Source of the DNA: Macrostomum lignano
Taxonomy: Eukaryota
NCBI GenBank assembly: GCA_002269645.1
Contig: NIVC01003112.1
Span: 54,807-118,806, forward strand
Direction of reading: 5' to 3'
DNA length: 64,000 nt
A program made the translations under genes and the position numbers. Positions within the stretch are counted from its first letter, which is position 1, and every line of letters begins with the position of its first letter. Below, piece by piece: positions 29,922 through 62,997 of this stretch. The notes under the pieces were generated by a model. It made no database searches. It was not told the origin of the DNA and saw nothing but the letters and a program-made list of their open reading frames with translations.

Positions 29922-31017
29922 TCAGTTGCCATCCTTCTCGCTTTCAGTTGAACTTGTCGAAGGCTTCGAACTTTTGCTAGCCGGGGCAGCAACGGAAGGA
30001 CCTGACAGGGGGTTGCGGAACAGGGCCGGGTCGCTGAGAAAAAAGGTCTCCTTGATATTCTGCGACATGTAGCCGAACTTCTGCGACTTCTTCACCAGTT
30101 CGGCCACCCGCTCTTGCATTGGCTGGCACAGCCCAGTGATGTGGCGGCCGTATATTCGGCCCGTGTAAGGCGAGACAAACTGGCTCAGCAGGCGGGCGTT
30201 CTGCGATTGGTCAAGAGCGGAGTGGGGTGGATGCTTTCTGATTGGATTGGTCGGGAGCGGAGTGGGGTGTATGTTTTCTGATTGGATTGGTCGGGAGCGG
30301 AGTGGGGTGTATGCTTTCTGATTGGATTGGTCGGGAGCGGAGTGGGGTGTATGTTTTCTGATTGGTCGAGAGCGGAGTGGGTGGATGTTTTCTGACTGGT
30401 AGAGATCGGAGTGGGGTGGATGCTTTCTGATTGGTCGTGAGTGGAGTATGGGGAGGGAAGGTGATTTATGATTGGTCGGGAGCGGAGTGGGGTGTATGTT
30501 TTCTGATTTGTCGAGAGCGGAGTGGGTGGATGTTTTCTGACTGGTAGAGATCGGAGTGGGGTGGATGCTTTCTGATTGGTCGTGAGTGGAGTATGGGGAG
30601 GGAAGGTGATTTATGATTGGTCGTGAGCGGAGTGGGGTGGATGTTTTCTGATTGGTCGAGAGCGGAGTGGGGTGGATGTTTTCTGATTGGTCACAAGAAA
30701 AGTATGGGGTAGAGGGTTGTGATTTGTTGACAGCATAAAATTTGTTTTGTAAATTGTAACTAGTCAAGAGTGGAGTGGAGTTTGCTTTACAAAATAGTCA
30801 ACAATAACAAACCATAAGGCATAAACAATATAATCACCTTGTAGTCTAGTGGAACATCCTGCCGACAGAGCACACATTTCTTGATTGGCTTCTTGTATGG
30901 ATCAGGCATGTCTGCCAAAGGCATGTCTGGATCGGTCTGTCCAGCAAGGGCAGCCCCAGTGGACAGCCCTAATTTTCCTCTGCCAACTGCAGTTAAAACT
31001 AATCGACACCTTAGCAT
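29922..31017 (-). CDS. MRPS18C: Mitochondrial ribosomal protein bS18m (S18c), 152 aa, 2 exons
   Basis: Exon 1 31017-30838 (basic targeting peptide, DPYKKPIKKCVLC...LDYK|gtgatt) plus exon 2 30200-29922 (NARLLSQFVSPYTGRIYGRHITGLC...Q...KSQKFGYM): the S18 signature. Confidence 0.92.
30203..30695. repeat. Degenerate 35-45-bp minisatellite (CTGATTGGTCGGGAGCGGAGTGGGGTG[T/G]ATGTTTT) filling the MRPS18C intron
   Basis: Directly visible; ~14 ATTGG (CCAAT on the sense strand). Confidence 0.93.
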
Positions 31018-41300: not shown

Positions 41301-44300
41301 AGGCCCAGCTTACCCATTCCCCAGAAGTGGCAAAAGATTCTCCTTCGGTGAAGTTTTCTAGTTTATTTTTTCCTGACCAACTTCAATCATTCGGCCCAGA
41401 ATCTGGTCCGTAATCGCTCATAATCCATTGAAACTGCGGCTCGATGGGCTTGCTTAGAGACGACGAGGGGACCGTAGGGAGAGACCGTTTCCCCCGGGCT
41501 TCGGAGACTGCCTGTCATCAATGCTAAATAAGGGAAATTTGGACAGTGCTTTGGAAACTACTTTCTGCTCACTGCTCCCTCATAATCCTCCAGCAAGCCA
41601 AAGAAACCGGCAGGTACGAGTAGTCGGCGAACTCATTAGTGCATTCGGACCGAGTCCCGTCCCGGGCACTCCTCAGGTCAGCCCGTTCCCCGTATTTTAA
41701 TTAATTTACCCCTTCATCGGCTTTGTCTTGCTGAGGCTGCTGCTGCTGCTGCTGCTGGATGCGAGCTCGGCTGGTCTGGCCAGCTTACCCGAGGCCTGGG
41801 TGCGCAGCGACGCGTTGCGTAGCCCTCTCAGGATGTAGCTCGTAGTCTCGAAGTTTCGATAGATTCTTTTCGCTAGAAGGCTATAGCCCCCGAGCCCAGT
41901 GCTGAAATGCGCATACTTTTTCCTGTCGACATGTAGCATAGCCTGGAAATCAGGGCGTAGGAGTGCCAAACAGGAGTCAATTAAATTGATGGTCTTTTTT
42001 GGGACACCAGTTGAATTCACACAGACGCTTTGTCGTCAGGCCCCCCATACATGTAAAGTTTCCGTTAAGATAACGGAAGTCTGGAAACCTTGTCCGCTCT
42101 CCGGGGAACAAAAGCAACAAATTTGATGAAGAATATACAGGAGCCAATAGAAATTCATCTGCTCCACAAAGGGCTTGCATAGAGCTCCTACACTGCTGAG
42201 GCCTGAGGCAGACTGTGGGCTGTGGGGAGGGGGGTCGCTACTCCCATCCTGTACATTGCTGCCGCAGCTCAGAGCTACTGGCCAATCACAGCAGGGTAAA
42301 CTGGAGATTAGAGCTGCTGTCCAATCGCAGTAGGGTGAACTGGAGATCAGAGCTGCTGTCCAATCACAGCAGGGTGAACTGCAGCAAGTGGCCAAACAAA
42401 ATTCAACAGAGCTATCAGTTGACAGCAATCAGGTCGAATCAAGTCGAATTGACTTTCTGCAGCAAGATATGATGCTGTGATCAAATTAAAGAGCAACAGA
42501 GAAGCAGGCTGTAATGGATGCCGTTATAAGCTAACCGTCCTTTTGATTTGCTGATGAAAGTGTGGAGAATTTTCTCTTTTTCATGCATATAACAAATGCA
42601 ACAGTATAACAAATTATACTGTTATAAATTCTCTAGACTCAAGCCATTCATCGGCACTGAATCCCATCTAATTTTATCAGCCTTTGGCAGTTTTCTGCTT
42701 TCAAAGCCCATTTGTTTGCCTCATGACTACTTATTTTGCCGTCTGAATTTCTTCCTACCACAGGACGCTAGGCTTTTCACAGACCTGATTAGTTCTCGGA
42801 CATTTAGACCAAATATTTTTAGCATACTGGACAAGACAAATTACGTACAAAAGGCCGGGATGATCTCCCCCCCCCCCCCCGATGCAGGCATGCTCACCAC
42901 AGTGGCCAAGGAGATCTTCAGCACGGAGATCCAGCTGAAGGTCATGGACATCGACACGGACTTTCCCCCGGAGAGCCGCTACCAGACTCACGTGCGCATC
43001 CTCATCAGCTTCGCCTCGCACAGCTCCCTGGCAGCCAGCTTGGACGACTTCGTGCAGCCCTGCTACCCCAGCAAGAGCCTCATCACCGTCAAGTCCTTTG
43101 TGCGCTACTTTCCCTACCACATCATTTTCGACTCGTTGCTCTTCATCAAGCAGAGCGGCGCCGCCATCCAGTCGGTTTGTCAGACTCTGCGCTTCAAGGA
43201 CAGCGTGGTGAAACTCACAGAGGTCTGCGAGCTGGTCAATCCGCCTGTTAACTTCTCGTCTCACTATATTAAGCGGTTTCTGAACTCGTCATTTACGCTG
43301 CGCCTCAAACGGTCCATCGAAGATGACTGTACAGAGAGCTCGCTGCTCATTAAGGGTAAGGGATGGGGCGGGAGATGCGTGTCCAGGGGAGAGCTCTCTG
43401 CTCATCAACGGTAAGGGTTGGGGCGGGCGGTGCGTGTCCAGAGGAGAGCTCTCTGCTCATCAAGGGTAAGGGATGGGGCGGGCGGTGCGTGTCCAGAGGA
43501 GAGCTCGTTGCTCATCAAGGGTAAGGGTTGGGGCGGGCGGTGCGTGTCCAGAGGAGAGCTCTCTTCTCATCAAGGGTAAGGGATGGGGCGGGAGATGCGT
43601 GTCCAGAGGAGAGAGCTCTCTGCTCATCAAGGGTAAGGGATGGGGCGGGAGATGCGTGTCCAGAGGAGAGAGCTCTCTGCTCATCAAGGGTAAGGGATGG
43701 GGCGGGAGATGCGTGTCCAGAGGAGAGCTCGCTGCTCATCAAGGTGATGAGTGGGACAAGTGATGAGTTTTTGCAGAGCTCTTTACTCGTCAAAGGTGAT
43801 GAAGTTTTTACCAGCTGCTACATTTGAATCGAACCTTACGCAGCTCACTATTGAACTTTAGGCCAGATGATATTCATGGAGGACACAAACCTTTTTCTAT
43901 TCGTCTGCTCACCTCGCGTGATGACGCTGAGCGAAATGATGGAGAAGAATATTTTCATGTCCGACCTGCCGCTCTACGACGTGACCCGCGAATTGCTGCA
44001 GGTGGGTCCAAGGGATTTCATGCTGTAGTTTACCGAAGTTAAGGTTCGCTCAGACCGGTATCAAATTGAGCCGTCGAATGTCATGACTAATGTACAAATA
44101 AAAAGCCACAAAAAGTTGCATAAGCCATGTCATCATGCAACAGTTGGCCTGTTTTGATAGCGGTGTGAACGAACCTATAGCCTATCATCTTCACTGTGGT
44201 GGCAGCATCCGGACTCCACCCTTTGCCCCTTGACCGCCGCGCCCCCGCCCTCTCAGGTGAACCAGCAACGCCTGGCAGAGATTGAGATCAGCAAGCACAT

Positions 44301-45511
44301 GGATGAGATGACGAATGAGATGAAGAAGATGACTGCGGAGCTGGAGGACGAGAAGAAGAAGACGCACACGCTGCTGTCCCAGATGCTGCCTTCAAAGGTT
44401 GCCAAGCAGTTGCTGGAGGGAAAGCGGGTCGCAGCCGGTGAGCGAACACGCGACATTCCAAGTGTTTCTCCTTTCTGTTGGACCGCCGCCTCGGGAGGTG
44501 CAATTCTCACATCCGCAGAGAAATACGAGATCTGCACGATCCTGTTCTCGGACATTGTCACCTTCACGGACATCGCCAGCCAGTGCACGCCCATGAACAT
44601 TGTGGACATGCTGAACAACCTGTACTCGCTGTTCGACAAGGCCACGGAGGTCAACAAGGTCTACAAGGTGGAGACGATCGGCGACGCGTACATGGTGGTT
44701 GGCGGAGTTCCGGAGCGCACAGACCAGCACGCGCACTTTGTCAGTGAGCAGGCCATGGACATGATCGAGGCCTCCTGTCGGGTGGCTTCGCCAGTCACTA
44801 ACCTGCCGCTTCAGGTAAAAGAGAGGTTAATACTATCAGCTTCTATCAGAAAAATAACGATTTTCATTCACCAAACCAATTCTACCCCAGATCCGAGTGG
44901 GCATGCACACCGGACCCACAGTGGCCGGAGTCGTTGGCGACAAGATGCCCCGCTTCTGCTTGTTCGGTGACACCGTTAACGTGGCCTCGCGCATGGAGAG
45001 CCACGGGGTGCCCAGTCGAATTCACGTCAGCCCGACCACCTACAAGTGAGAAAGTAGAGAGTGTATTCTGCGTCGTGAAAGAAATACATTTCTACTATAA
45101 CTCCGAAATCTTCCGAAATCTCCCTCCAGAGTTTTAACCGAGAAGTGCGCCGACAAGGGCTACAAGTTTGAAGGTCGCGGCGAGATCAACATCAAAGGCA
45201 AGGGGCTTATGAGCACCTACTTCCTGCTGGGCCACGCCAAGCGCACGCTGAAAGCGGCCACCCCGAACCCCTTCGCTGGCAAAGCGTCAGGCTCGGCCAG
45301 CGCAGCGGCTTCCTCCGGCGCCGTCAAGGTGGCAAACGGAGCCGCCCCTAGCGAAGGCCGGCACCGGCTGAGCGACCCGGTGTTCGAGAAAGACGAGACC
45401 GGGACGCCGCCACCCGAGTCAGCTGATCCGGGCCACCGACAGCAGGCCGGAGCTGCCAACGGTTTGCAGTTTCGGAAGGCGCCTCAGACTGCCACCTGCC
45501 GCCTGTTGTAA
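38304..45511 (+). CDS. Atypical/beta-type soluble guanylyl cyclase (H-NOX, H-NOBA/PAS, coiled coil, cyclase), ~686 aa, 11 coding exons, C-terminal CaaX
   Basis: Exons 38304-38306 (ATG only, then gtaagt), 38675-38748, 38898-38998, 40290-40473, 41073-41149, 42888-43355, 43862-44001, 44257-44437, 44519-44814, 44891-45045, 45130-45511; total 2061 nt, in frame. Motifs MYG start, LDSLH105, [76 protein letters not shown]. Confidence 0.92.
39087..40145. repeat. 42-bp minisatellite GCGTAGCGATGTCCCAACTAGACCT[C/T]TGTG[G/A]TGTA(GGATGGA|TGGCAGG), ~25 units, cyclase intron 3
   Basis: Directly visible. The unit is a multiple of 3, which gives the long stop-free pseudo-ORFs. Confidence 0.97.
43335..43744 (+). 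repeat. 55/57-bp tandem array made of the duplicated exon 6/intron 6 junction of the cyclase (7 units plus a partial)
   Basis: Unit = (AG)GAGAGCTCTCTGCTCATCAAGG|GTAAGGGATGGGGCGGGAGATGCGTGTCCAG. The first unit is the real exon end at 43355. Confidence 0.95.
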
Positions 45512-46685: not shown

Positions 46686-48063
46686 CATGTTTTTTTGTCT
46701 TTTTTAACGCAACGGACTGCTATTTTTCTGCTATTTTTCTGCTATTTTTCGGACAGAAACATTCGAAATATAAGGCAAACAAATCAATCAATCTCAGTGA
46801 GAAAATGTTCCATTTTCCCCAAATTTTCTGCAGTTCAAATTTATGTCTGTAACGTCAGTAGTATGGACCGAATCGCTTTTCGATTTTTTTCTCGCGGCTT
46901 CGTGACGGCAAAATTGCAGCTCTCCCGCCATGCCAGTGACTCACCCGGCGGGAAATTCTTCCCAAAGCCTCTCCTCCCCTGTTGGGAAATGGGCAATGCG
47001 GTCGGTGCGCTGGCCTCCTCTGATTGATTTCAATTCGCTTCTGTTCCCAGCTTTGATGCCGGGGGATTCGGAGTGGGGGGGAGGTTGGGGCAACAATCGA
47101 TGCAGTTCCCCGGGGAGGCAGCAGGGAGGTTATAAGCTGAGCCGGGCCGCCACTTACTTTGATCGTGGAGAAGACTGCAGAGAATGGAATGCTCAAGAAT
47201 GGTTTGCTCTCTCTCTTGTCTCGGTTTCCCAGTTTTTCATTTTCTCTCTCGTTCAGGGCTCAATTGAAGTGGTCCAATTGTTTCTTTGGGGAAAACTGTC
47301 CCCTCACCCTTTCTACAAATCGCTCCGCGCGCCACAGCTGAACTCCTCGCCTCTCCTCGGTCGTCCCGGGCCTTCTCAAGTGGTTGAAAATGGCCATAGG
47401 CAGCTCGCGCATTCTGCTCAAGTGGGCCCAGAGGCAGCACAAGCAGCCGAATCCCCCATTCTGGTTCAGTGCAGTTTCAGAAATCCCCAGATGGCCCGGC
47501 TGCGGCCAAATCCCGGCAAGCGGTTGGAGAATTTCGGCCTGTTGCAGAATTGCAAGCCGGAGGGCTTGGGCTTGAGGAAGGCTGCTCAGGGCGTTGCTAT
47601 GCGGCCCGTGCAATAAATACATTTTCACATTAGCCAAGGCTGGCTTTACACAACCGAGATACGAGATTTGATCTTCAGGATATTTTCAACAAGTCCCATG
47701 TTGTCCTAATTGTTTATCCTTTTCTGGCATGCATCTCTGTCCAGTACGAGTGAAATGCGCGGTTCAAAGCACTGAAAGCTTATCGCAGCAGGTGCACTTC
47801 TTATTCATCTCGATAGGGCAACAGTGTATCGCAGATCGCGATAACAACTGATGCAATAAATTACAGATCAGAAATTGCCAGTTGGTGAAACATGGGTGAA
47901 CAGGTCAACAATCGGCACTGACACTGTGTAGCCAGGCGGTGGCTTCCTGCAGGCAGTCACGGCTTGCTCTCAGAGATTTGGACGATTAACTGACCACATC
48001 GGCCAGCTGTTAATAGATAGAGGGAGAGCGGGATAACCCCGTATAAAATTACACCCTGCAGAA

Positions 48064-48653
<590 letters not shown>

Positions 48654-50731
48654 CTTTTCTGGCAGAGCCCTAAAACCCTTCCAAGATGGCCTGACACAAT
48701 ATAGCAGATAAAGAAAGAATATTCAATGGACGGTGAAGAGCGCAGATGAAGCAGGGCGTGTCAATGAGGCGGCAGCGACTGACCGACCACGGGCGCGCGG
48801 ACCCTCTCCAGAGGAAATTCCCAGAAGCAGCTGAGGTGTAGAGGCAAAGCGAGGCTGGGCATGCTCTCAACTGCACGTCGCGGAGTCCCTCATTTCTGCC
48901 TCATTCCCGAGGCAACAGCCTCTCCGTCTCACCTGGGACAGGTCGGCGTTAATTAATTTTTGCCGCTTCTCACCTTCCCACAGGGACAAACGCAGTTGCT
49001 GTGTGGCTGGAGGTGAAGCGCACTGCATTGAGAAGGTGCTTGAGTTGGGCCTGGCAGAGAGAAATGAGTAGGCGCCAGCGCCGCGGGGGATCCCGTAGAT
49101 GAGGTCCTCCGCCTGCCTTCGGCAACGCGACTCCACTGGCCCGGGGGGGGGGGCTTCTCGAGTGCCAAATGAATATTTGATATTATTGCTACGTGAGCCT
49201 CGGTCACGCGTATTCGCTGATAAACAGATTTTCTACTCGTCATTTTATGGCCAGTTGCAATGCCCAGCTTCGATCGAGTCAGTCAGTCAATGCTTGAGAA
49301 TGTTTAGAATTTATTATTTAACCTGTTCTGCTGCCGCTGTTGGTGTCGGGTATGAATTTATGCCCCCCACCATTCAACAGCCTCGAGCTCTTCAACTGTC
49401 AGTCATTCGATTGTCATCCTTCAACCTTAGCGGAGACAAGAGCTGTCATTCGTATTTCTCTCCGACTCCTCTCCCCACCTGCGCCTCCACGGCCTGACAT
49501 TTGATACGCCCATTGTTCGGCAGTGCAGCGGCCTGTCAATTGCATAATCAGTGAGTCTGAGCCTGAGGGACTGCTCATTCGTTTGCTTATTGAGTAAGCA
49601 GATTTTAGCATTAACGAGCTGCTAATAACCAAGCTGCTAATGAGTGAGCTCTAACCCCATACTGGCTTCATATGCTATTTGGCAAATTGAAAACATTGCT
49701 AAAAAGAATTGATATCGCAGATCTCGAAGTAAACAAGTCAAGACGTCAAAGGAGTCGAGGGGTTCATTGCGCCCCCCCATTCCAGTTGCTGCCGCTGCAA
49801 CCAAATTCATAGCTCCTATTTTGGGGTTTCAACCAGTCAAAATTTTAGCCACAAGGACGCTAATTAGGATTGGCCGAGTGTCGCGGAGGAACATCTGTTC
49901 AGCCCAATAAACAAACTGCAAATCTTTCAACGTTTTGTTGTACTTTGGATTCACCCTACCGGCTAGAGATCAAATGTCTTCTGTTTGCTTCGGAATAAAT
50001 ATACTAACATCCTTGCCTAATCAGAACACAGTTGGCTAACAGCAAATTTGTTTTATAAATAGCAGGTGCAGTCCAGCTGCAAGTGAAGACTAAAACATTT
50101 CAGACAGGTCTATCAACTAGAAAAGCTTCGCGTTTTACTTTCAGTGCAGAGTGTGCAGTTCCATAACACAAGTGCGCTGGAGGTGAATGCATAAATCATG
50201 CAGGCCTGGCTCGGACAATCTGCGCAAAAAGGCACCCCACGACCATTGCAGCATTTGGAAACAGTTTGCGAACATTGGCTTTTGCTGCTCGAAAATCTTG
50301 GCCCAGAAAGCACAGAAACCCCTGCTGCGCCGTTTCCGCCCCCCTCTCTCTCCTCTCGTGGGCTTCGCCCTCTCCGCGCCTCTCACTTTTGCTAAAGTCA
50401 GTTCTATACTGGCCGCACTGGTCAGGTAACGATATCAAGTCAGACCGAAGGCCATGCTGAATCATCGTTAGCTTAATACGAGTAGTTAATGTAATTCAAG
50501 TAGTTAAAGGCAAAGATAATTGGGAGCAAAAATTCACAGGGCGATACCGCAAAGCTTACTGTGATTAATAGAATCGAGGCGCACATCAATTTTACAATAA
50601 GTACTGTTCATTTTGAATCGATTGAATGATGAATAGTTATTTATAGAGGCATCAAATTATACCGAGATTAACTACAGTCAAATTTTGTAAAAACTCTCGA
50701 TGACAAGGCGCACCTCCTCCGCGTGCTTGGC

Positions 50732-51106
50732 TCACTTCTCAGAGTACTCTGGAGGCGGTGGCTGTTGCAGGTACTGCTGCGGGTACTGCTGCGGGTACTG
50801 CTGTGGGTACTGCTGCGGGTACTGCTGTGGGTACTGCTGCGGGTACTGCTGCGGGTACTGCTGCGTGACAAACACCTGAGCATGTGGGCCAGCATGGTTG
50901 GGATTCTGCACAGCCCTGGCCGCGGCGGCCTGCGGACTCCGGCCGAACAGGTTGGAGCCGAGCTGCGGACGGCAGGCCTCGCGGCAGCAGCAGTAGTAGG
51001 CGCACAGGATGCCGATGCCGCCAATCAGCGGGATGACGATCACAACCACGGCGACAATAACCCAGTACACGAGCACGTACGTGTCTGCATAGCTGTTGTA
51101 AGACAT
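50732..51106 (-). CDS. Small Cys-rich single-pass membrane protein, paralog 1 (124 aa; QYPQ repeats; PPEY)
   Basis: Intact ORF; TM VLVYWVIVAVVVIVIPLIGGIGIL; family motif CAYYCCCREACRPQLGSNLFGR; TATAA-like element ~100 bp upstream (51203-51207). Confidence 0.82.
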   Translation of the reverse strand: MSYNSYADTYVLVYWVIVAVVVIVIPLIGGIGILCAYYCCCREACRPQLGSNLFGRSPQAAAARAVQNPNHAGPHAQVFVTQQYPQQYPQQYPQQYPQQYPQQYPQQYPQQYLQQPPPPEYSEK

Positions 51107-51704
51107 GGCTTCGGTATTGAGGGCTCAGGATACGCTAGTGTGCGGAGATTGAAGCCCAGCTCAGTCGGTCCTCTGCTCGCTTAATTTATTCAAGCACAGA
51201 AATTATAAACCCCCGCTCTTATCGCGTACAGCGCACTCCGCCCTGCTTTACTGAGGTGGAACGCTCCTTATCTGTCCATGTGACTTCTCACAAAGCAGCT
51301 CACGAAGCAGCGTGCAATGGAAGTCTGCAGTACAGTGTGCGTACAATACCTCTGGCCCCGAAGCGGATGTCGCCTCGATGTAATACCAAGCCGAGTTTAT
51401 TTAGCCAGCGGCTCAGACGATAGCTCAGTTCAACCCATTATGTTTTACTTAAAAAGTCTTCTGAAAAAGACTTCACGTGCTGTTTGTATTGCGTTCCAAA
51501 ATTTTATGTAAAACACTGAGAATTGGCAATGAATAATATTTACTTTGACTATGGCTATTGCGGAAGGCAATTATACATTTATTCATAATCGAGCAGTCAC
51601 AAAATTAGTAATTATCGTGTATGTGTAAAAGTATATGTACTTTTAAAAATAAGTCTAACTATTGGTTGATGTAAATCTTTGTGTTACGCTCGTAACTTCG
51701 GGCA

Positions 51705-52019
51705 TCAGATCTTCTCTGTGTACTCGGGCGGGGCGGGCTCAGACTGCGGCTGCATCTGAGGCGGCTGCAGCAGCACATGAGGCTCATCCTCCTGCCTGAT
51801 GACGATAACAGTCTCAGCTGGTCCGGTAGTGACGTTGCCACCTTGCTCCACCGCCTGAGCTCCCCGGCCGAACAGGTTGGACCCCATCTGCGGCCGGCAG
51901 GTCTCCTTGCAGCAGCAGTAGTAGGCGCACAGGATGCAGATCCATCCGATCATCATGATCGATCCGTAGGTCAGGTTGATCCATAATCTGATTGTTTCAA
52001 TTTCTTCTCTGCTTGACAT
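51705..52019 (-). CDS. Small Cys-rich single-pass membrane protein, paralog 2 (104 aa; PPEY)
   Basis: Intact ORF; motif ILCAYYCCCKETCRPQMGSNLFGR; ends PPEYTEKI; TATAAAT at 52109-52103. Confidence 0.82.
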   Translation of the reverse strand: MSSREEIETIRLWINLTYGSIMMIGWICILCAYYCCCKETCRPQMGSNLFGRGAQAVEQGGNVTTGPAETVIVIRQEDEPHVLLQPPQMQPQSEPAPPEYTEKI

Positions 52020-52102
52020 GGCTTCGTTGCGCTCAGCGTAATGTTACGTTTACCAGAGTTTTCTAAGTCAACGGGCAGACCTGAGCGCATTCGACAGTGA
52101 AT

Positions 52103-52109
52103 ATTTATA
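52103..52109 (-). promoter_or_regulatory. Candidate TATA box of paralog 2 (similar elements at 51203-51207, 53178-53184 and weakly 54850-54855)
   Basis: TATAAAT ~85 bp upstream of the ATG, at a comparable position in the paralogs. Confidence 0.5.
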
Positions 52110-52791
52110 AAAGCAGCACTTCCTGTTAATGTTTATATCATCAAAGTTTTGACAAATTGGGTTATAACGCCTTCGCTTACCTAATATGACCTGGCATCAC
52201 TGGCATTCCAATCACGAGTGCTTCCATGGCAACAACAACTGACGCACGAGATTTCTAGCAGGGCCCATTAAAACAACAACAACAACAATGGGACGAACCG
52301 ACAAGTGATAGGTGACAATTTGTTTAACGATAACTTGAACCATATAGACAGCATCAGGCTCAGGTCTCGAAAGTGGGCCGATGTCGTGGAAGGCATTGCG
52401 CCTGGATGACCGCAGCAAATGTGTCGCAGCGAGTGTTGCAAAAAATTTTTGTTAATAGTGTGGGAGCGAGCGCCACTGTGTACTGAAGATGTTCAGTTCT
52501 TAGCTGTTGGAGAACTGATAGGAGCCACTGTAGCGACTGCAAATACTGCGATAAATTCACAGTGTTATCATAGTTAATATTATCTCAAAATGAAGAGTAA
52601 CTGAGATTAAGGAACGGGAATGTCCTGTACTTTTGCAGCATGCAGCACAGCAGCCACGTTTCATACACAAAATCATAAATTAATATCTAATGCGCTCAAT
52701 GAGCTTGGGAATATTCGTGTAATTTTACTGCACAATACATATTTTAACACATTGTTTGATAAGTACAATACAAAATTTTAACAAAAACTAA

Positions 52792-53085
52792 TCAAAGCAC
52801 TGGTCGACAGTCACTAAACCATGGCATCAGTGCTGTTTCCCAATGGCCTGTAGCTCCCAGGCGGCTGCTTTGGTTGTTCTTCTGTGGCAACCAGCTCTTT
52901 GGTCTCTGGCCGAACAGCTTTGAGCCCATCTGAGCCCGGCACTGCTGCTGGCAGCAGCAGTAGTAGGCGCACAGAATGCCGATGCTGGCCACCAGTTTGA
53001 TGGCCAGAAAGATGCCGGGCACCCAGTTTCTGATGTATATGACTTGTTCGCTGTACTGTGCATCCGTAGGGGTCGTGCCTCCCAT
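52792..53085 (-). CDS. Small Cys-rich single-pass membrane protein, paralog 3 (97 aa; C-tail possibly frameshifted)
   Basis: Motif ILCAYYCCCQQQCRAQMGSKLFG; TATAAAT at 53184-53178. Confidence 0.72.
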   Translation of the reverse strand: MGGTTPTDAQYSEQVIYIRNWVPGIFLAIKLVASIGILCAYYCCCQQQCRAQMGSKLFGQRPKSWLPQKNNQSSRLGATGHWETALMPWFSDCRPVL

Positions 53086-53468
53086 GCTTGCTCACCGAAT
53101 TCTCCGAATTAGTCTTCTGAGTCCAGCTAACTTGGGGACTTATAAGGCTCTGGTCGCTGTTACCAGCGGAGCCGGTGATTTATACGGTAGGGATGCCGCG
53201 GTTTTCTTTTGCTTACTAGTTTGATAAAGTTTATAGCGAACTCCAGATCCGCCTGAAGAGCTTTTAGGAAAAAGATTATCAGTTTACTAGGAAAAAGTCT
53301 CCAAGCTTGTTGGCATAAGCGTGAAATTAGCGTTCGATCATTCACAATGGTTTTTAGTGTATTCGACATTGCCTCCCCGCTGTCGAGAACACAGTGCGGA
53401 AGGATTCTCTCGAGCTCTATGAAAATTATGATTAAACCCAATGGGAACTGGATAGTAACCTAATGATA

Positions 53469-53690
53469 GTAATAATAATAATAATAATTGATTACACCTG
53501 CCCTAATGGGCAATGTGCAACCGACAGCTCAGCCGCAGCTATTGTGCGGCGCATCTGAAGGCTGCGTACGGCTGTTCAGTCCAAGGACTGGGGGGTCGCC
53601 ACACACCCTCAGTTACCCCAGCTAATGCTGGCACCAATTTTACAGCTGGGTGAACTGAAGCAATGCAGATTTAAGTGTCTTGAGCCCTTT
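53469..53690 (-). mobile_element. 5'-truncated copy of SINE family A with its 3' end and (ATT)n tail
   Basis: The reverse complement of 53609-53684 matches 24498-24575 (CAAGACACTTAA..TGCATTGCTTCAGTT.ACCCAGCTGTAAAAT.GGTGCCAGCATTAGCTGGGGTAA). It continues ~120 bp to an (AAT)n tract at 53471-53487. Confidence 0.8.
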
Positions 53691-53724
53691 CAGTGTCTTT
53701 CAGTCGTGAGTCCACAAGGCTACA

Positions 53725-54195
53725 ACTGGATGATAAACCCAATGGGAACTGGATGGTAACCCAATGGGAACTGGATGATAAACCCAATGGGAACTGGATG
53801 ATAAACTCAATGGGAACTGGATGGTAACCCAATGGGAACTGGATGGTAACCCAATGGGAACTGGATGATAAACTCAATGGGAACTGGATGGTAACCCAAT
53901 GGGAACTGGATGATAAACCCAATGGGAACTGGATGGTAACCCAATGGGAACTGGATGATAAACCCAATGGGAACTGGATGATAAACCCAATGGGAACTGG
54001 ATGGTAACCCAATGGGAACTGGATGATAAACCCAATGGGAACTGGATGATAAACCCAATGGGAACTGGATGGTAACCCAATGGGAACTGGATGGTAAACC
54101 CAATGGGAACTGGATGGTAAACCCAATGGGAACTGGATGATAAACCCGATGGGGACTGGATGATAAACCCGATGGGAACTGGATGGTAACCCAAC
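53725..54195. repeat. 22/23-bp minisatellite CCCAATGGGAACTGGATG(GTAA|ATAAA), ~21 units; one orphan unit at ~53435-53465 on the far side of the SINE
   Basis: Directly visible. Confidence 0.96.
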
Positions 54196-54563
54196 GAAAG
54201 TGAATTCTGAAGTCAATGATGGTAAATTATGGGCTAGGAAATATTTAGGGAAAAAATTTCACGCAAAAAAGATTCATTTTAGAGCAGTTAGCCTTACAGA
54301 TATGGTAGCTATAAGCTCAGTCTGAACTTAAAACAGAATTTAAAATAAAACACCATCAATTGATTCACTTCTCTCTGTGAATATATATTTGGAGATAGAT
54401 TAATGTATTATTCGTACTTTATAAAACTGTAACTGTCTGCATATCCATCGTATTAATACGTAGGTACAGCAATGATTTTTGTTCTAAGCTGTTCTCAGGG
54501 GATGACAGTTAGGCTGATATACAATACTTGTAAAATCACAGTTCTTGAGCACTTGAATATCGT

Positions 54564-54785
54564 CTAAACTTTGTTGTCATTTCGGAAGCCGCCGCCCGAG
54601 CCGATCCGGCTGTACTCCTGGCTGCTGGCCCGGCCGAACAGGTTAGACCCCATCTGCGGCCGGCAGGTCTCCTGGCAGCAGCAGCAGTAGGCGCACAGGA
54701 TGCAGATCCACCCGGTCAGAAGGACCGATCCCCAAACCGCGTAGATCCATACTCTGATTTTTTCAGCGTCTTCAGTGCTTGACAT
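54564..54785 (-). CDS. Small Cys-rich single-pass membrane protein, paralog 4 (73 aa)
   Basis: Motif ILCAYCCCCQETCRPQMGSNLFGR. The N-terminus and 5' flank align with paralog 2 (MSSREEIETIRLWI vs MSSTEDAEKIRVWI). Confidence 0.8.
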   Translation of the reverse strand: MSSTEDAEKIRVWIYAVWGSVLLTGWICILCAYCCCCQETCRPQMGSNLFGRASSQEYSRIGSGGGFRNDNKV

Positions 54786-57569
54786 GACTTGGTTGCGCTC
54801 TGCCTTAGCCTTACGATTACCAAGCTTGTTACAAGTCGATGCGCGGATGAATATAGCACTTCCGGTTTGTTTTTAAAATCTCGAGTTAGGCTACGAGTAT
54901 TTGCTGTAGCCCTCTCACCTACCTTTTAGCGCCTGGTCACTGCTCCGATGTTTCAAAGCTAGAGCCACCGTGCACCGGAAGTCTTTAATATCTGCTAGCT
55001 GCGACAAGCGGATGTCCCCATTTAATCTTGTCAGCAGCTCCAACTATAAACTTGTGTGTGCATCTAAACATTTTGCACTAATAGTACTTGACAAAATATT
55101 GAATGGCAAATATGCGCAGAAAAGATGGATACATCCACACAAACCTATCAAATTACCCCCAAGAGCAAGCATAACATGAGGCCGCTTGAGATAGTTGAGC
55201 AGGCTCGAGGTTAACCTAATACAGCTGACGACAGGCAACAAACAATAAATCTAGACTAATGTACTTGGAGCTGAGTTCGACAATGCTCAGTAAGCAGAGC
55301 GTAAATCAAAGCAGTCTGTCCTTGGCTAGCGACTTGCCGTCAGAGATTTGCTCCACGCCTGGCTGAGAAGACGGCGTTTTTCAGCTGAAGATGAGATTCG
55401 ATTTTTCTGATACGCAATCACAATGGAACACTCGAGCGTAAGCACCCGCGGGAGGCTGGGCTGGTTCTGGGTGTCTACACTGAGTTGATAGCGAAAAAAT
55501 ATCACCCGCCATGCAGAGAACCAGCATCCAATCTTGGCGGCATCTGCTTCTGGGAACTGGAAAATCTGTCAAGGTCCCCCGTCCTCTTGGCCGCGTCTCT
55601 CCCATCTTCTCCGTAAGCTCCGATATGCCAGGCCGGGGGTGAGACGGAAATGACTGATCGACCGACTCAGAGGCAGACGTTTGGCGACCAGGCCATGGAT
55701 ACAAGAAATCTCAACCAGCATCGAGGCGCCACCCCCAAGAACGGAGCAGACCCCGGCCCAACTCCTGCAGCCCCAACCAGCTATTTCCCAGCGAGCCTGT
55801 CAAGACGGAAATTAAGTTTTTGATTGAGCTCGAACGGAGCCAGCCGCCTCAAACTCCCCAGTGGTGATGAATGCCCCCAGCCTCTGATTCGGCTGGGAAG
55901 TTTTGAGACCGGCACGCCTGGTTGAAAGAATACGAACAGCTAAAATCATCATCTGTGTTGTAGACTTTTAATTTTTCATAAATAATAACGTGATCTAACT
56001 AATTAACTCTTTAATCATATAACTGCTACTTTAACAGTTACCAGACGTCCTTCCACTGTCACTGCCTGTAGCTCATGGATTCGTCGAGTTTTGTGTTCTT
56101 AAGTTGTCCCTGGATTCAGATTGAGCCGGCAGCATCACGTGTGGGAATATTCAGCCAAAGTCGCAGGAGTGCTGCTGCACAGAGCTTAAACAATTCACGA
56201 CTGCCAATTACAATTGCCAATTGCATCTCCCGGCGACCAGCTGTCAATCAAGTCTCAAATTTCACTCCTCGTAGATTAATATCTCTGGCTGCCTTCAATT
56301 TATTGCACCGCCGCTCTCTGCATTGAAGCAGCGAATTTTTATCAGCTAAGCGCGAGCGTACAGGCAGGGAAACGCAGACAGAAGGACAGAAAGAAGAAGA
56401 ATGATGACGGGGGGCTATCTGACAATGGCCGCTACGCAAACAGCGGCAATATCAGGAATCTTTACAGCCAGTGCAAATGGATGGGCACGCAGACTCGGCC
56501 CTTCCCGACTGACCCGGCAGAGCAAACACCTGGCGGGCACACCTCGGCCGCCTGGCAAAAAGCCTCCCAAGAAAACCTGCGGCCCTGTCGGCAAACCGAA
56601 CTGAGAAATCCTATGCAGTGCTTTGAATTGACAGAAATTTTCCATTTCGTTTGCAGATACTGCTAGCGGCTTCAAGGCTGGTTTTGCTCAGCCTTACCAG
56701 ATAATTCCAAACGATTGTGAGGATTATTTCGATTGGGATAAAACCGTTTCTCTTCCCCGCCGGCTGGTCTCAGCGTTCTCAGACTGAAATTTTGCGCCAA
56801 ATTAGCCAAGGGCGGAGTCCAGCCCCAGCCAGCTCAATGACTTGTGCATTATTAAAAGGCACTCAAACTTTATTAGCCCCGGCACACTCTCTCTCTCTGT
56901 CCGTCCGCCAGACAACCCCCCCCCCCGTATCGCACGGATCCTCCCGGCCCGGTCTGACAAAAGCTGCGTCCCAGCGGGGCTCCCTGCCGCTCTCTGCTCA
57001 GCGCCCCAGCGAGAGGAAAAAAAACTTCAAGCCGAAAGCGCCGCCGAGCAGCGATCGCAAAACAAAGAGATTACGTAACAAAGATTGGGTTCCACAGCGG
57101 CCCAGACGGCTTAGCAAAACATATGGAGCGGATCGGGGAGGAGAGGGAGAGGCGACAGTGGAGGAAAGCAAATCGAAGGATTTGAAAATGGGCGAATTCT
57201 GATGCTGCCGACGGCTGCGGTTTTCCCCTACCCAAAAGTTTTCCCACTCCCCCAGAAATCAGCCCCCAAATCCCGCTTTCTCTTTGCTTTTGTGCTAGCG
57301 CGCGTGCGCCAGGGGAAATTTATCCCCACACTTCCCCCTCCCTCCCAGACTTGCCAGCTGCCTTCAATGCTGGGAATAAAGATAGGACAGAGAGACTCGA
57401 ACGACAACGAGAAGTGGATGAGAGCACAGACGATGCAGCTCTATTTGGCTCCCGGGCAGAATGAGTTCAGGGGATCAGGGAAGCGCAGCACGCTCGATAA
57501 ATATAATTTTGCCGTTTCAGCTTCCAGCGTCCAGTCCGCGTGTCTCCGTTTGCCGGCGGATCAGTAAGG

Positions 57570-60446: not shown

Positions 60447-61656
60447 TCGGCGATGGCAGATGGAGCTGCTGTTTTATCTCGGCGTCCTGCTGCCCACACT
60501 CGTGGTTATCGTTGCCTTCATCGTTTTCCTGCTGTGCTGGTTCCGGCTTGCCGCTCGCCTGCCATTCTGCAAGGACAGGCGCGGGAGTCAGACGGCGGAG
60601 CAGCAGCAGCAGCCGCAGCAGCAGCAGCCGCAGCACACGATGCCGCCGTTGCCTCCTGTTCCGCAGCAGCCGACTCTGGCCGCCGGTCAGCACCGCGGCC
60701 CGCACCAGACCATCAGCTTGGACCAGCTGCACCAGCAGACGCAGCAGCACCCCGTGTACGCTCTGGATGAAGATGGCCGGCTGCTGTGGGACAAATACAC
60801 TGTGCGCGACTCCATGCACTCGCTGTACTTTGGCGACCGGCCCCAGCCAGCGATCCCGGGCTCTGTCACTTTCCCGGCTTTGGCCGGCTTCCCAGCGCTT
60901 CAGCACCACAGTCAGATGCTTTATCAGCAGCAGCAGCAGCAGCAGCCGCAGCAAAAGCAACAGCAGCAACAAAGTCAGCAGCACCACTCGTCGAAATTCG
61001 CCAAGAGTGCCTCCTGCCTGTTTCAAACTGGAAGGCAAACAGTTCGACAGCCGCCTGGCATGGTTTCGTCGACTTCGACGTCGTCAGCCTTCGGATTTCG
61101 CCAGACGCAGCCTCCGCCCCCGCCACATCATCCTCCGCCGCCGCCACCACCACAACCGCCCCCGTCGGTTCCACAGCAGCACCCGGCTTCAACAATGATC
61201 ACAGCCATCCCCGGTGGACGGCGCCGACTGCAGAAGAGCAGCTCCATGGAGCAACCCGGGGGTCATGGCGGTGGCAACGCGCCAGACGACGAGGAAGACG
61301 GCACGGGCCAGTACCAGCTGACCTATTCCGCCTTCGCCCGCACCCGCACCACTGCAGGCCGCGATCACTCCGACCACAGACTGTTCGGCGCAGCCGCAGG
61401 CAAAGGTGGCAGCGGCAGCGGCGGCGGCACCTCGCGGGACAATTCTGCGGGAACCTCGGATCCGCGGACGCCCTCCGAGTCCGCGTCCGAATCCGAGCGA
61501 AGCCATCTGGTCCGGCCGCTGCCGCTGAGGACATTGCAGCACCAGCACCGCTCCAGTTCCAGCCCCAGTTCCAGCACCCGTTGCCACCTAATCGAGCGAA
61601 CCCGGCGAACGTTCTGGACGACGTTCACTCCAGTCCAGAGTCCTCGCCAGTCATCG
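60447..61656 (+). CDS. Large coding exon of an unidentified single-pass membrane protein with a Q/P/S-rich cytoplasmic region (ORF track 60460-61719)
   Basis: Pyrimidine tract plus CAG acceptor at 60446; strong GC3 codon bias; TM LLFYLGVLLPTLVVIVAFIVFLLCWF followed by a basic stop-transfer; poly-Q and poly-P tracts; strong phase-0 donor TCG|gtgagt at 61657. Start and remaining exons not established. Confidence 0.6.
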
Positions 61657-62997
61657 GTGAGTCATCGACCTGACGGGAGGTTCAATCATCGCTGGCGGAG
61701 GGAGGCCTTGAACTTTTGACTATAGCCGGCCAAGACACTGCACAGTCCATCCATACAGCTTCTATCGCGACTGTCTCCTCTTTTGATGTTGGCGCCAATT
61801 ATCTGTTTTAATCTTAACCCATTGTGAGTGTCTACCTCTCGCATACGAGCCTGGATGCTGATTCGTGTTGGTCACAATCGCTGCACTGCTTGTAATGAAC
61901 TGTTTAATTTTGTATCCTATTGATGTCCTGTTTAAGGGTTACAGAATGGCGTGCGATCTCTTGGGAAGTTAATAAGTATATATTTTCTGAACTGTATATA
62001 AAGCTAGACAAACATGTGAGCCTAATTAACACTTTCTGAGTCCTCACTAGCAACTGCATCTTAGCCTTAACCTTTGAAAGCCCTGCCTAACTCAAAACGC
62101 TTTCAAGATTTGAGAAGTGCCGCGTCGTTCTACTTAAACAGTCCTTCGCCTTTCCTGCTTAGGTTAAATAATCTCTAGCTCTGCTCTAAACTCGGAATAC
62201 CGTATACGTAGAGAAGGGAGTTTTGATGCACAGACAATGCATGGTTAGCTCAGCTTTATATTATTTTCATTACACGACTGACTCCATACGGCTGCTCCAG
62301 CGACACCTCTTCAGCCTCTCTGCTTCATCTCTGCTCTATCTCCCTTTCAATAGTCTATTAGTGCAATCCGCCCACCGGCTCGTTCAGTCCAGCCCACAGC
62401 CTCCCTGCTGCCTCTCTTCGCACCCTCTCTCTCTGTCAAGAAGGTTTTATTTACTCAGCGCCGTGTCTGTGCAGTGCGCAATGCCTAACAACTAATTATG
62501 AGCGTCTCGGCACCCGCTGTCTGCTGTAGCTAACTGTACTCGGAGCGCCCTGCATTTGCCGCACCTCTCTCCCTACCCTCTCTATCGCTCTCTGTCTCTT
62601 CTAGTAGCAGAAATTTTTTTTAGTCGCAGCCGAGTGCCATATGGGCTGGTAGCAATGCTATGCTAGCCCCTCACTTTCCCACAGTGCGCAGTTGCTGCTG
62701 CTGCAACCGATTCGTTTCGAGGTCGGGCCGCATCAGTTGCAACTGTAGACTGTGCTAGCCTGCAAATCGTTGATCCCCATTGGCCCCTTTGTCTCTCCCA
62801 GTCTCTGTACTGCTGAGCCTGTGTACAAATATATTAATATATCATACTGTGCGCAAACCGGCAGCTTCTTCATTTGATGGCCTATTTATGCTGGTAAAAA
62901 TATTGAGCAAATTATGACTGTTGAAGAGATGAGAGTGCCAATGAGTTTTTAGAGTTGTAAACTTTTCATGCGCTCTCGCAAAAATCTGCCAGTCGGC

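What the first reader, a model, noticed from the sequence alone, without database searches (positions are those of the whole stretch)
50732..54785. Tandem cluster of four intronless Cys-rich membrane microproteins: candidate undescribed family
Seen: four same-strand ORFs (124, 104, 97, 73 aa) within 4 kb. Each has a short N-terminus with no signal peptide, one TM helix, and then a near-invariant ILCAY(Y/C)CCCxxxCR(P/A)Q(M/L)GS(N/K)LFG block, while TM and tails diverge freely. Each has a TATA-like element 65-100 bp upstream, and two end in PPEY. Established: juxtamembrane Cys clusters are S-palmitoylation sites and PPxY binds Nedd4-family WW domains. Shisa-like/WBP1/CYYR1 proteins have TM-Cys-PY tails but also a signal peptide and luminal Cys domain, and CYSTM proteins have the Cys-TM at the C-terminus, so neither layout fits. 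Inference: a lineage-specific family of palmitoylated adaptors or channel/receptor auxiliary subunits, with GSNLFG as a conserved binding motif. Such short ORFs are often missed by annotation.
Basis: partly seen in the sequence, partly recalled or inferred. Interest (0 to 1): 0.82.

Follow-up and report, generated by a model that had tools for sequence, protein, structure and literature searches.

The report
Flatworm-only cysteine-rich membrane microprotein cluster
Four neighbouring small genes of the flatworm Macrostomum lignano encode single-pass membrane proteins that share a sharply conserved cysteine-rich block and have no detectable relatives in any other organism; the family is real but uncharacterised, in a species where such orphan genes are common.

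Summary
Four minus-strand ORFs (124, 104, 97, 73 aa) at 50732-54785 share I-x-ILCAY(Y/C)CCCxxxCR(P/A)Q(M/L)GS(N/K)LFG after a single hydrophobic helix. Two end in PPEY. Each has a TATA-like hexamer 70-101 nt upstream of its ATG.

The window is Macrostomum lignano contig NIVC01003112.1. Three of the four ORFs are already called as genes in the assembly's transcript-derived annotation; two of them are named "hypothetical protein" in GenBank. ORF3 is never called and is deleted in a divergent haplotype.

Coding status is supported by:
- GC3 of 0.67-0.80, against intergenic GC of 0.32-0.46
- dN/dS of about 0.2-0.5 in the block
- only synonymous haplotype differences in ORF1 and ORF4

No Pfam hit was found. 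Profile searches of 1.84 billion and 5.8 billion proteins, the PDB, and metagenome and viral contigs returned only the species' own copies. The cluster is therefore a lineage-restricted orphan family, not a Shisa-like, CYYR1 or CYSTM member.

The most likely working is N-out/C-in type III membrane proteins with an S-acylated juxtamembrane Cys cluster, with two paralogs recruiting Nedd4-type ligases through PPEY. This is inferred, not shown. Orphans make up 35-45% of M. lignano genes, so interest is modest.

The parts
50732..51106 (-). O1, a 124-aa paralog: 9-aa N-terminus, long TM, Cys block, (QQYP)n tail, C-terminal PPEYSEK
   Evidence: ORF; called as a 124-aa gene in L001 and L002; GC3 0.80; 2 synonymous and 0 nonsynonymous differences from haplotype L001
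51705..52019 (-). O2, a 104-aa paralog with C-terminal PPEYTEKI
   Evidence: the exact protein is in NCBI, in the same 90% cluster as PAA83760.1 (BOX15_Mlig003630g4); GC3 0.73
52792..53085 (-). O3, a 97-aa paralog and probably a decaying or dispensable copy: Lys inside the TM, and P>A, N>K and R>Q changes in or next to the block
   Evidence: never called as a gene in L001-L003; in haplotype L001 an in-frame 198-nt deletion leaves a 31-aa remnant without TM or motif
54564..54785 (-). O4, a 73-aa paralog with a short tail and no PPEY; closest to O2
   Evidence: the identical protein on NIVC01000406.1 is deposited as the 5'-partial PAA83761.1 (BOX15_Mlig011417g1); 2 synonymous and 0 nonsynonymous differences from L001
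50942..51016 (-). Conserved 25-codon block of O1 (IGILCAYYCCCREACRPQLGSNLFG)
51867..51941 (-). Conserved block of O2 (ICILCAYYCCCKETCRPQMGSNLFG)
   Evidence: 96% DNA identity to O4 over an 81-nt island with sharp edges
52909..52983 (-). Conserved block of O3 (IGILCAYYCCCQQQCRAQMGSKLFG)
54633..54707 (-). Conserved block of O4 (ICILCAYCCCCQETCRPQMGSNLFG)
50744..50755 (-). PPEY codons of O1 (residues 118-121)
   Evidence: Read from the sequence and the translation
51720..51731 (-). PPEY codons of O2 (residues 97-100)
   Evidence: Read from the sequence and the translation
50762..50865 (-). 12-nt tandem repeat, 8.7 copies, encoding the (QQYP)n tail of O1
51202..51207 (-). TATAAT, 101 nt upstream of the O1 ATG
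   Evidence: no upstream ATG in between
52104..52109 (-). TATAAA, 90 nt upstream of the O2 ATG, preceded by GGAAGTGCT, which O4 shares
53179..53184 (-). TATAAA, 99 nt upstream of the O3 ATG
54850..54855 (-). TATATT, 70 nt upstream of the O4 ATG and 31 nt upstream of the 5' end of the deposited transcript-derived model

Best explanation
SHOWN: this is a tandem array of four single-exon paralogous genes of Macrostomum lignano. Each has its own TATA-type promoter and encodes a 73-124 aa protein with one hydrophobic helix near the N-terminus. The family is restricted to this lineage as far as current protein databases can tell.

The conserved module is the C-terminal half of the membrane helix plus about 20 residues after it: five to seven cysteines in (C..)C...CCC...C, then R-(P/A)-Q-(M/L)-G-S-(N/K)-L-F-G. 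The N-terminal segment, the outer half of the helix and the tails evolve fast.

INFERRED: the helix is an uncleaved signal-anchor that places the short acidic N-terminus outside or in the lumen, and the Cys block and tail in the cytosol (type III topology). The juxtamembrane cysteines are S-acylated, which pins the invariant GSNLFG segment to the inner leaflet, where it forms the family's common interaction surface. The disordered tails add paralog-specific outputs. In O1 and O2, the C-terminal PPEY recruits Nedd4-family WW-domain ubiquitin ligases, so these two act as small membrane adaptors, or are themselves sorted by ubiquitination. O4 lacks that output. O3 is probably on its way to loss.

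CONFIDENCE BY STEP:
- real expressed coding gene family with no known relatives: about 0.9
- N-out/C-in topology with acylated Cys cluster: about 0.55
- Nedd4-adaptor role of O1 and O2: about 0.3
The overall figure of 0.5 is for the statement as a whole.
For: Coding and real:
- Four in-frame ORFs share a 25-codon block.
- GC3 is 0.67-0.80, like bona fide genes in the window (0.58-0.89), against intergenic GC of 0.32-0.46.
- Block dN/dS is 0.37-0.54, or 0.17-0.26 without the three variable codons.
- Between haplotypes, O1 and O4 show 4 synonymous and 0 nonsynonymous differences, P=0.0025.
- O1, O2 and O4 are called genes in the GCA_002269645.1 annotation, which is built only from RNA-seq and transcript evidence (PMC5730564).

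Promoters:
- TATAWW lies 70-101 nt upstream of every ATG, with no upstream ATG downstream of the predicted start.
- The 5' end of the O4 model lies 31 nt after its TATA.
- The O2 and O4 upstream regions are homologous.

Orphan status:
- No Pfam hit at E<=10 apart from noise.
- Only the species' own proteins turn up in 5.8e9 clusters and in an exhaustive hmmsearch of 1.84e9 representatives.
- Nothing was found in the PDB or in metagenome or viral contigs.

Topology:
- There is one TM-like segment per protein. The N-flank has net charge -1 and the C-flank 0 to +2 in all four.
- The hydrophobic stretch is too long for a cleaved signal peptide and is preceded by a long acidic segment (inspection).
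- AlphaFold2 gives one helix (residues 4-37) and a disordered tail.

Precedent for the mechanism:
- WBP1L is a palmitoylated single-pass adaptor that binds NEDD4-family ligases through [L/P]PxY (PMC6991692).
- Comm, Rcr1/2, PRRG4 and CYYR1 are short single-TM PY-motif proteins that control trafficking of surface proteins (PMC5578492).
- PPEY(S/T)EK at the extreme C-terminus is kept between O1 and O2 although the rest of their tails is only loosely alignable.
Against: - There is no direct expression, acylation, topology or binding evidence. The gene identifiers were not found in the supplements of four M. lignano expression papers.
- The charge bias across the helix is small, so the opposite orientation is not excluded.
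- Only two of the four paralogs have PPEY, so ligase recruitment cannot be the family's core function. In P/Q/Y-rich tails a PPxY can also arise easily.
- Selection tests rest on very few substitutions. Individual pairwise tests are borderline (P 0.04-0.38).
- Part of the synonymous conservation of the block is explained by codon preference and could also reflect gene conversion.
- dN/dS in the N-terminus plus outer TM is about 0.6-1.7. Most of each protein is therefore weakly constrained, as expected for young, possibly marginal genes.
- O3 is lost in one haplotype.
Confidence: 0.5

Rival explanations
1. Cysteine-rich membrane proteins for metal or oxidative-stress handling. This would be functionally like CYSTM proteins, but with the module at the opposite end. 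The cytosolic CCCxxxC cluster would bind or buffer metals or act as a redox sink, and tandem duplication would reflect dosage or environmental adaptation.
For: There are five to seven clustered cysteines next to the membrane. The O1 tail is a Q/P/Y repeat, recalling, from my own memory, the low-complexity regions of CYSTM proteins. CYSTM proteins are small, Cys-rich, membrane-associated and implicated in stress and metal resistance (PMC2804304, PMC10217909). Fast-evolving tandem arrays are typical of environment-facing genes.
Against: There is no sequence relationship to CYSTM. The invariant non-cysteine residues (R, Q, GS.LFG) point to a protein-protein interface rather than simple metal chelation. 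Yeast CYSTM cysteines themselves turned out to be palmitoylated (PMC10840359), which favours the acylation reading.
Confidence: 0.15
2. Small oligomerising membrane proteins that form or modulate ion-conducting pores, or regulate a pump or channel through their TM helix. This would be viroporin-like or phospholamban-like. The layout (short N-terminus, long TM, juxtamembrane acylated 'LCAYCC'-type cluster, short tail) resembles nidovirus envelope (E) proteins.
For: The layout and size (73-124 aa) match. The conserved part includes the inner half of the TM helix. The resemblance to E-type proteins is recalled from memory and is a lead only.
Against: No Pfam family, including the coronavirus E model, scores even at E<=10. 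There are no viral-contig relatives and no PDB sequence match. The outer TM half is poorly conserved and O3 has a Lys in it, which is unusual for a pore-lining or tightly packing helix.
Confidence: 0.1
3. Young, marginally functional or non-functional ORFs. On this view the conserved island reflects recent duplication, codon bias and gene conversion rather than protein-level function.
For: There are no homologs anywhere. Outside the block dN/dS is near 1. The block is conserved at synonymous sites too (block dS 0.07-0.43, against about 1 or more in the N-terminus plus TM for all pairs except O2-O4, where it is 0.22) and has sharp edges. O3 is deleted in one haplotype. 35-44.5% of M. lignano genes are species- or genus-specific.
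Against: Coding-type GC3 extends over the whole ORFs, not just the block. A TM-like hydrophobic segment is retained in all four despite sequence turnover. The synonymous-only haplotype differences in O1 and O4 (P=0.0025) and block dN/dS of 0.17-0.26 argue for constraint. Each copy has its own TATA promoter. Three copies have transcript-based gene models.
Confidence: 0.12
4. Terminal exons of Shisa-like/CYYR1-type genes whose signal peptide and luminal Cys domain lie in unrecognised upstream exons; or, alternatively, secreted Cys-rich peptides with a cleaved signal.
For: There is a superficial resemblance: a Cys- and Tyr-rich stretch, a single TM and PY motifs. O2 and O4 have six Cys in the pattern C*C*CCC*C, somewhat like the Shisa-like C*C*CC*CC pattern (PMC5578492).
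Against: The Cys cluster follows the only hydrophobic segment instead of preceding it. No Shisa, CYYR1 or WBP-1 Pfam hit was found. The transcript-based models are single-exon and start at these ATGs. An in-frame TAA lies 90 nt upstream of the O4 ATG, and there is no 3' splice context. TATA boxes sit 70-101 nt upstream. The hydrophobic segment (19-27 aa after a 10-20 aa acidic segment) is not signal-peptide-like.
Confidence: 0.03

Closest known systems
WBP1L/OPAL1 and the wider Shisa-like (STMC6) group: Shisa, WBP1, VOPP1, TMEM92, CYYR1
   Same: Small single-pass membrane proteins with a disordered, proline-rich cytoplasmic tail carrying PPxY. WBP1L is experimentally palmitoylated and binds NEDD4-family ligases (PMC6991692). 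CYYR1 also has Cys/Tyr-rich sequence around the TM (from memory).
   Different: Shisa-like proteins have a signal sequence and a luminal C*C*CC*CC domain before the TM (PMC5578492). Here nothing precedes the TM except 10-20 residues, the Cys cluster lies after the helix, and no Pfam model of these families matches. Only two of the four paralogs have a PY motif.
Commissureless, yeast Rcr1/Rcr2, PRRG4: short single-TM PY-motif trafficking adaptors
   Same: Short proteins with one TM, some without a signal sequence, with cytosolic L/PPxY motifs binding Nedd4/Rsp5, and very low conservation outside short motifs (PMC5578492). This is the best model for how O1 and O2 might work.
   Different: There is no sequence relationship. 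Those families lack the juxtamembrane CCCxxxC-GSNLFG module, which is the only strongly conserved part here.
Palmitoylated type III transmembrane adaptor proteins of leukocytes (LAT, PAG/Cbp, NTAL, LIME, SCIMP); from general knowledge
   Same: A very short exoplasmic N-terminus without a signal peptide, a single TM, juxtamembrane Cys acylation motif, and a disordered cytoplasmic tail carrying short linear motifs.
   Different: They have CxxC/CxC rather than a 5-7 Cys cluster, their tails signal through phosphotyrosine motifs, they are vertebrate-specific, and no homology is detectable.
CYSTM (cysteine-rich transmembrane module) proteins
   Same: Small, Cys-rich, membrane-associated eukaryotic proteins (PMC2804304). 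Their low-complexity P/Q/Y-rich regions (from my own memory) recall the O1 tail. The cysteines of the yeast members are palmitoylated (PMC10840359).
   Different: The CYSTM module is at the extreme C-terminus (tail-anchored), whereas here the module is N-terminal and followed by the tail. There is no Pfam PF12734 match.

Membership tests
Shisa-like / STMC6 (Shisa, WBP1/VOPP1, TMEM92, CYYR1) | Signal sequence followed by a luminal six-Cys C*C*CC*CC domain N-terminal to the TM | tested here: not met
   The only hydrophobic segment starts after 10-20 residues and the Cys cluster follows it. An in-frame stop lies 90 nt upstream of the O4 ATG. The transcript-based models start at these ATGs.
Shisa-like / STMC6 (Shisa, WBP1/VOPP1, TMEM92, CYYR1) | Sequence match to the family profiles (Pfam Shisa, CYYR1, WBP-1 and related models) | tested here: not met
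   hmmscan against Pfam-A at E<=10 gave no such family for any of the four proteins. The profile search of 1.84e9 proteins returned no member of these families.
Shisa-like / STMC6 (Shisa, WBP1/VOPP1, TMEM92, CYYR1) | Cytoplasmic PPxY/LPxY motifs | tested here: inconclusive
   PPEY is present at the C-terminus of O1 and O2 and absent from O3 and O4. WW-domain binding is not testable here.
CYSTM (PF12734) | Cys-rich TM module at the extreme C-terminus (tail-anchored), matching the CYSTM profile | tested here: not met
   The module is N-terminal and followed by 22-69 residues. There is no Pfam hit.
Palmitoylated type III transmembrane adaptors (functional class, not a homology family) | Short exoplasmic N-terminus without a cleaved signal peptide, one TM, juxtamembrane cysteines, disordered cytoplasmic tail | tested here: met
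   Hydropathy and flank charges; AlphaFold2 single helix (residues 4-37) with a disordered tail. The orientation is predicted only.
Palmitoylated type III transmembrane adaptors (functional class, not a homology family) | Actual S-acylation of the juxtamembrane cysteines, and motif-dependent recruitment of partners | not testable with these tools
   Needs acyl-biotin exchange or 17-ODYA labelling, and pull-downs.
Nidovirus/coronavirus envelope (E) viroporins | Sequence match to the family profile; pentameric channel | tested here: not met
   No Pfam hit at E<=10, no viral-contig relative, no PDB sequence match. Oligomerisation is not testable here. The layout resemblance is recalled from memory.
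Taxonomically restricted (orphan) protein-coding gene family | No homolog outside the lineage, combined with evidence of coding constraint and transcription | tested here: met
   Only M. lignano proteins were found. Block dN/dS is 0.17-0.54, and haplotype differences in O1 and O4 are synonymous only. GC3 is coding-type. Gene models come from a transcript-derived annotation. Other Macrostomum species could not be searched.

The most novel reading that the evidence does not exclude
The conserved TM-half plus CCCxxxC-R-P-Q-M-G-S-N-L-F-G module defines a new class of S-acylated type III membrane adaptors that arose within Macrostomorpha. GSNLFG would be a previously unknown juxtamembrane interaction motif, the tails would be interchangeable outputs (Nedd4 recruitment in O1 and O2), and the rapidly changing exoplasmic N-terminus (six clustered nonsynonymous haplotype differences in O2) would reflect diversifying selection on an extracellular recognition function.
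Probability: 0.2. Interest if true: 0.45.

Novelty: new variant of a known kind. Interest (0 to 1): 0.3.

Why it matters
If the inferred working is right, this would be one more independently evolved example of the 'short single-pass adaptor' design (Comm, Rcr, PRRG, Shisa-like, WBP1L). It comes with an unusually crisp conserved juxtamembrane motif, in an animal where transgenesis and RNAi make it testable.

It also illustrates how young membrane microprotein genes are built. A small constrained core (inner TM half plus Cys block) is duplicated in tandem, while the N-termini and tails are swapped or decay.

In practice the cluster shows inconsistent annotation across the redundant M. lignano assembly. 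O4 is called on one contig only, O3 on none, and O1 and O2 are called on the window's contig. It does not open a long-standing question, and orphan genes are too common in this species for the existence of the family to surprise a specialist.

Tried and rejected
- Pfam scan of all four proteins at E<=10: only noise (Prominin, two DUFs, all far below their cut-offs).
- Profile search of 5.8e9 protein clusters at E<=0.01, and again at E<=10: only two M. lignano proteins.
- Exhaustive hmmsearch of a trimmed profile against 1.84e9 representatives: the same two proteins.
- PDB profile search at E<=10: only TM-helix noise (PsbJ, CALHM1).
- Degenerate-pattern scans of metagenome and viral contigs: pattern hits but no tblastn-confirmed relative.
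- AlphaFold2 of O2 with the five-sequence alignment: one helix plus disorder, mean pLDDT 59.7. I did not run a structure search, because a single helix gives meaningless matches.
- Searching for the gene identifiers (Mlig003630, Mlig011417) in full texts and in the supplements of four M. lignano papers: nothing found, so there is no expression pattern.
- I first read the '.g4' suffix as position in a polycistronic unit. I rejected this because the suffix numbers near-identical loci of one 95% cluster (PMC5816591).
- Upstream-exon and Shisa-like idea: rejected (see rival explanations).
- A frameshift relationship between the O2 and O4 tails: the DNA alignment shows homology simply ends after GGCCGG.
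- bacterial/archaeal genome-contig collection: not scanned, because it holds no flatworm sequence and so was irrelevant.

Full report
**What is in the sequence**

Region 50732-54785 holds four minus-strand ORFs of exactly the reported sizes:
- O1: 50732-51106, 124 aa
- O2: 51705-52019, 104 aa
- O3: 52792-53085, 97 aa
- O4: 54564-54785, 73 aa

Their alignment has 19-20 invariant columns, almost all within I-x-I-L-C-A-Y-(Y/C)-C-C-C-x-x-x-C-R-(P/A)-Q-(M/L)-G-S-(N/K)-L-F-G. A permissive tblastn of all four against the window finds no fifth copy.

Each protein has one TM-like hydrophobic segment that runs directly into the Cys cluster. This segment follows 10-20 mostly acidic residues. The N-flank has net charge -1 and the C-flank 0 to +2. 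AlphaFold2 models O2 as a single helix (residues 4-37) followed by a disordered tail.

O1 ends in (QQYP)n...PPPPEYSEK, encoded by a 12-nt repeat with 8.7 copies. O2 ends in ...APPEYTEKI. O3 and O4 have unrelated shorter tails without PPxY.

A TATAWW hexamer lies 101, 90, 99 and 70 nt upstream of the four ATGs. Its background density is 9.3e-4 per nt, so a hit in such a span has about a 4% chance for each gene.

**Origin and annotation status**

A profile search returned only two proteins, both from Macrostomum lignano: PAA83760.1 (BOX15_Mlig003630g4, 104 aa, 95% identical to O2) and PAA83761.1 (BOX15_Mlig011417g1, a 5'-partial 86-aa form of O4).

The window is 100% identical over 18 kb to contig NIVC01003112.1 of assembly GCA_002269645.1. 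A second contig is 99.7% identical, and a third (NIVC01000406.1, locus L001) is about 97.5-98% identical, so it is a divergent haplotype or subgenome copy.

Gene calls differ between these copies:
- O1 and O2 are called on the window's contig.
- O4 is called only on L001.
- O3 is called nowhere.

The annotation of this assembly is derived purely from RNA-seq and transcript evidence plus TransDecoder (PMC5730564). The existence of these models is therefore indirect evidence that O1, O2 and O4 are transcribed. The '.gN' suffix numbers near-identical loci of one cluster, not genes in a polycistron (PMC5816591).

The deposited O4 model begins at window 54824, by my reading of the sequence. That is 31 nt downstream of TATATT (54855-54850), the classical TATA-to-start distance. 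An in-frame TAA lies 90 nt upstream of the ATG, and no upstream ATG intervenes.

The O2 and O4 upstream regions are clearly homologous: GGAAGTGCT, then TATA, then GAGCGCAAC-AAG-C immediately before the ATG. The duplication unit therefore included the promoter.

**Are they genes?**

Composition says yes. GC3 is 0.67-0.80 in the four ORFs, like the arrestin-domain, guanylate-cyclase and S18 coding regions of the same window (0.58-0.89). The spacers have 0.32-0.46 GC.

Between paralogs, the 25-codon block has dN 0.03-0.16 and dS 0.07-0.43, giving a ratio of 0.37-0.54. Leaving out the three free codons of CCCxxxC, the ratio is 0.17-0.26. Counts are small, so single comparisons are only borderline significant.

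Between haplotypes, O1 and O4 differ by four substitutions, all synonymous (P=0.0025 under neutrality).

The codons of the block are the locally preferred ones (TGC, TAC, TTC, CAG, ATC, GCC, CTG, GGC). This explains part of its synonymous conservation, and gene conversion may add to it. O2 and O4 are 96% identical over an 81-nt island, 70% identical in the preceding 75 nt, and unrelated after GGCCGG.

Outside the block, dN/dS is about 0.6-1.7. Hydrophobicity is kept but sequence is not.

O3 looks like a copy in decline. It has a Lys in the helix, P>A and N>K changes in the block and R>Q just after it, and no gene model. In L001 an in-frame 198-nt deletion reduces it to a 31-aa remnant lacking helix and motif.

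**Relatives**

None were found:
- Pfam at E<=10 gives only noise.
- Profile searches of 5.8 billion protein clusters, even at E<=10, return only the species' own copies.
- An index-free hmmsearch of 1.84 billion representatives returns the same two proteins.
- The PDB gives only generic TM matches.
- Scans of metagenome and viral contigs give no confirmed relative.

Other Macrostomum genomes and transcriptomes could not be searched with these tools. The defensible statement is therefore 'restricted to Macrostomum lignano or its close relatives'. In this species 35-44.5% of genes fall in that class (PMC5816591).

**How it most likely works**

The layout is a short acidic N-terminus, a long uncleaved hydrophobic segment, more positive charge after it, and no second TM. 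This predicts a type III (N-out/C-in) signal-anchor protein.

That places the 5-7 cysteines and the invariant R-P-Q-M-G-S-N-L-F-G at the cytosolic face. Clustered juxtamembrane cysteines there are typical S-acylation sites (general knowledge). WBP1L is an experimentally palmitoylated example that also binds NEDD4-family ligases through PPxY (PMC6991692).

The constrained unit is the inner half of the helix plus the next 20 residues. This argues for an interaction surface at the inner membrane face that all paralogs share, with the disordered tails as variable outputs.

PPEY(S/T)EK at the extreme C-terminus of O1 and O2 is retained although their tails are otherwise only loosely alignable. It fits a group I WW ligand, as in Comm, Rcr1/2, PRRG4 and CYYR1 (PMC5578492).

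All of this is inference. Nothing here shows acylation, orientation or binding, and PPEY is absent from half the family.

**Comparison with known families**

By working, the closest are the short single-pass PY-motif adaptors and the palmitoylated type III adaptors (LAT/PAG type).

By membership it belongs to none of them:
- Shisa-like proteins require a signal sequence and a luminal C*C*CC*CC domain before the TM. This was tested and not met.
- CYSTM requires a C-terminal module (PMC2804304). This was not met.
- No family profile matches.
- A layout resemblance to nidovirus E-type viroporins is noted from memory only and fails the sequence tests.

**Verdict**

This is a real tandem family of membrane microprotein genes, still uncharacterised, and three of its four members already have gene models. 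It has a clean conserved Cys-rich juxtamembrane module and no detectable relatives.

The claim that annotation missed the genes is only partly true, and the interest was overrated given how common orphan genes are in this genome.

I rate it a new variant of a known kind, with interest about 0.3.

Noticed in passing
window 51984-52010 (O2 codons 4-12), compared with L001 10010-10036: Six of the eight nucleotide differences between the two O2 haplotypes fall within 27 nt of the predicted exoplasmic N-terminus, and all six are nonsynonymous (SREEIETIRL against SEEDVEKIRF). Poisson P is about 4e-5 at the local 2.2% divergence. At three of the sites the L001 allele matches O4. This points to fast or diversifying evolution of the N-terminus, or a small conversion tract.
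   Followed up: partly
window 52842-53039, compared with the L001 9094/9095 junction: An in-frame 198-nt deletion in the divergent haplotype removes the TM and the whole conserved block of O3, leaving a 31-aa ORF (MGGTTPTDAQYSEQVRETALMPWFSDCRPVL).
   Followed up: yes
window 53724-54194 (plus a solitary unit near 53430-53460): A 23-bp minisatellite (AACTGGATGATAAACCCAATGGG, about 21 copies) lies between O3 and O4. The window as a whole is packed with 17-55 bp minisatellites, for example at 1-3273, 5150-7668, 21410-22405 and 39087-40129. These create long spurious ORFs on both strands.
   Followed up: no
L001 11326-15125, compared with window 50574-50683: The divergent haplotype carries an insertion of about 3.8 kb just 3' of O1, replacing about 108 bp of the window. 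Its content was not examined, and no family member lies in it by tblastn.
   Followed up: no
window 60460-61719 (+): The neighbouring, divergently oriented gene encodes a 419-aa protein (404 aa in two other copies). Its TM helix sits at the very N-terminus, followed by juxtamembrane Cys residues and a long Q/P-rich disordered tail. It has no Pfam family. It is another orphan N-terminal-anchor membrane protein but is not homologous to the cluster.
   Followed up: partly
window 52111-52121 and 54856-54864 (-): O2 and O4 share a GGAAGTGCT element (with an ETS-like GGAA core) just upstream of their TATA boxes, and a conserved 5'-UTR end, GAGCGCAAC(C/G)AAG(T/C)C, before the ATG. O1 and O3 lack the first element.
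   Followed up: no
window 10197-11279 (+); 42596-44970 (+); 29922-30767 (-): Conserved genes elsewhere in the window: an arrestin N+C domain protein (E 1e-22 and 2.5e-20), exons of a guanylate cyclase (HNOBA plus cyclase domain), and an ORF with a ribosomal protein S18 domain. The arrestin-domain gene is about 40 kb from the cluster, and no link to it is implied.
   Followed up: no
window 48059-48653: A (CAGA)n microsatellite of about 149 copies explains the strong AT skew of the 48-50 kb bin.
   Followed up: no
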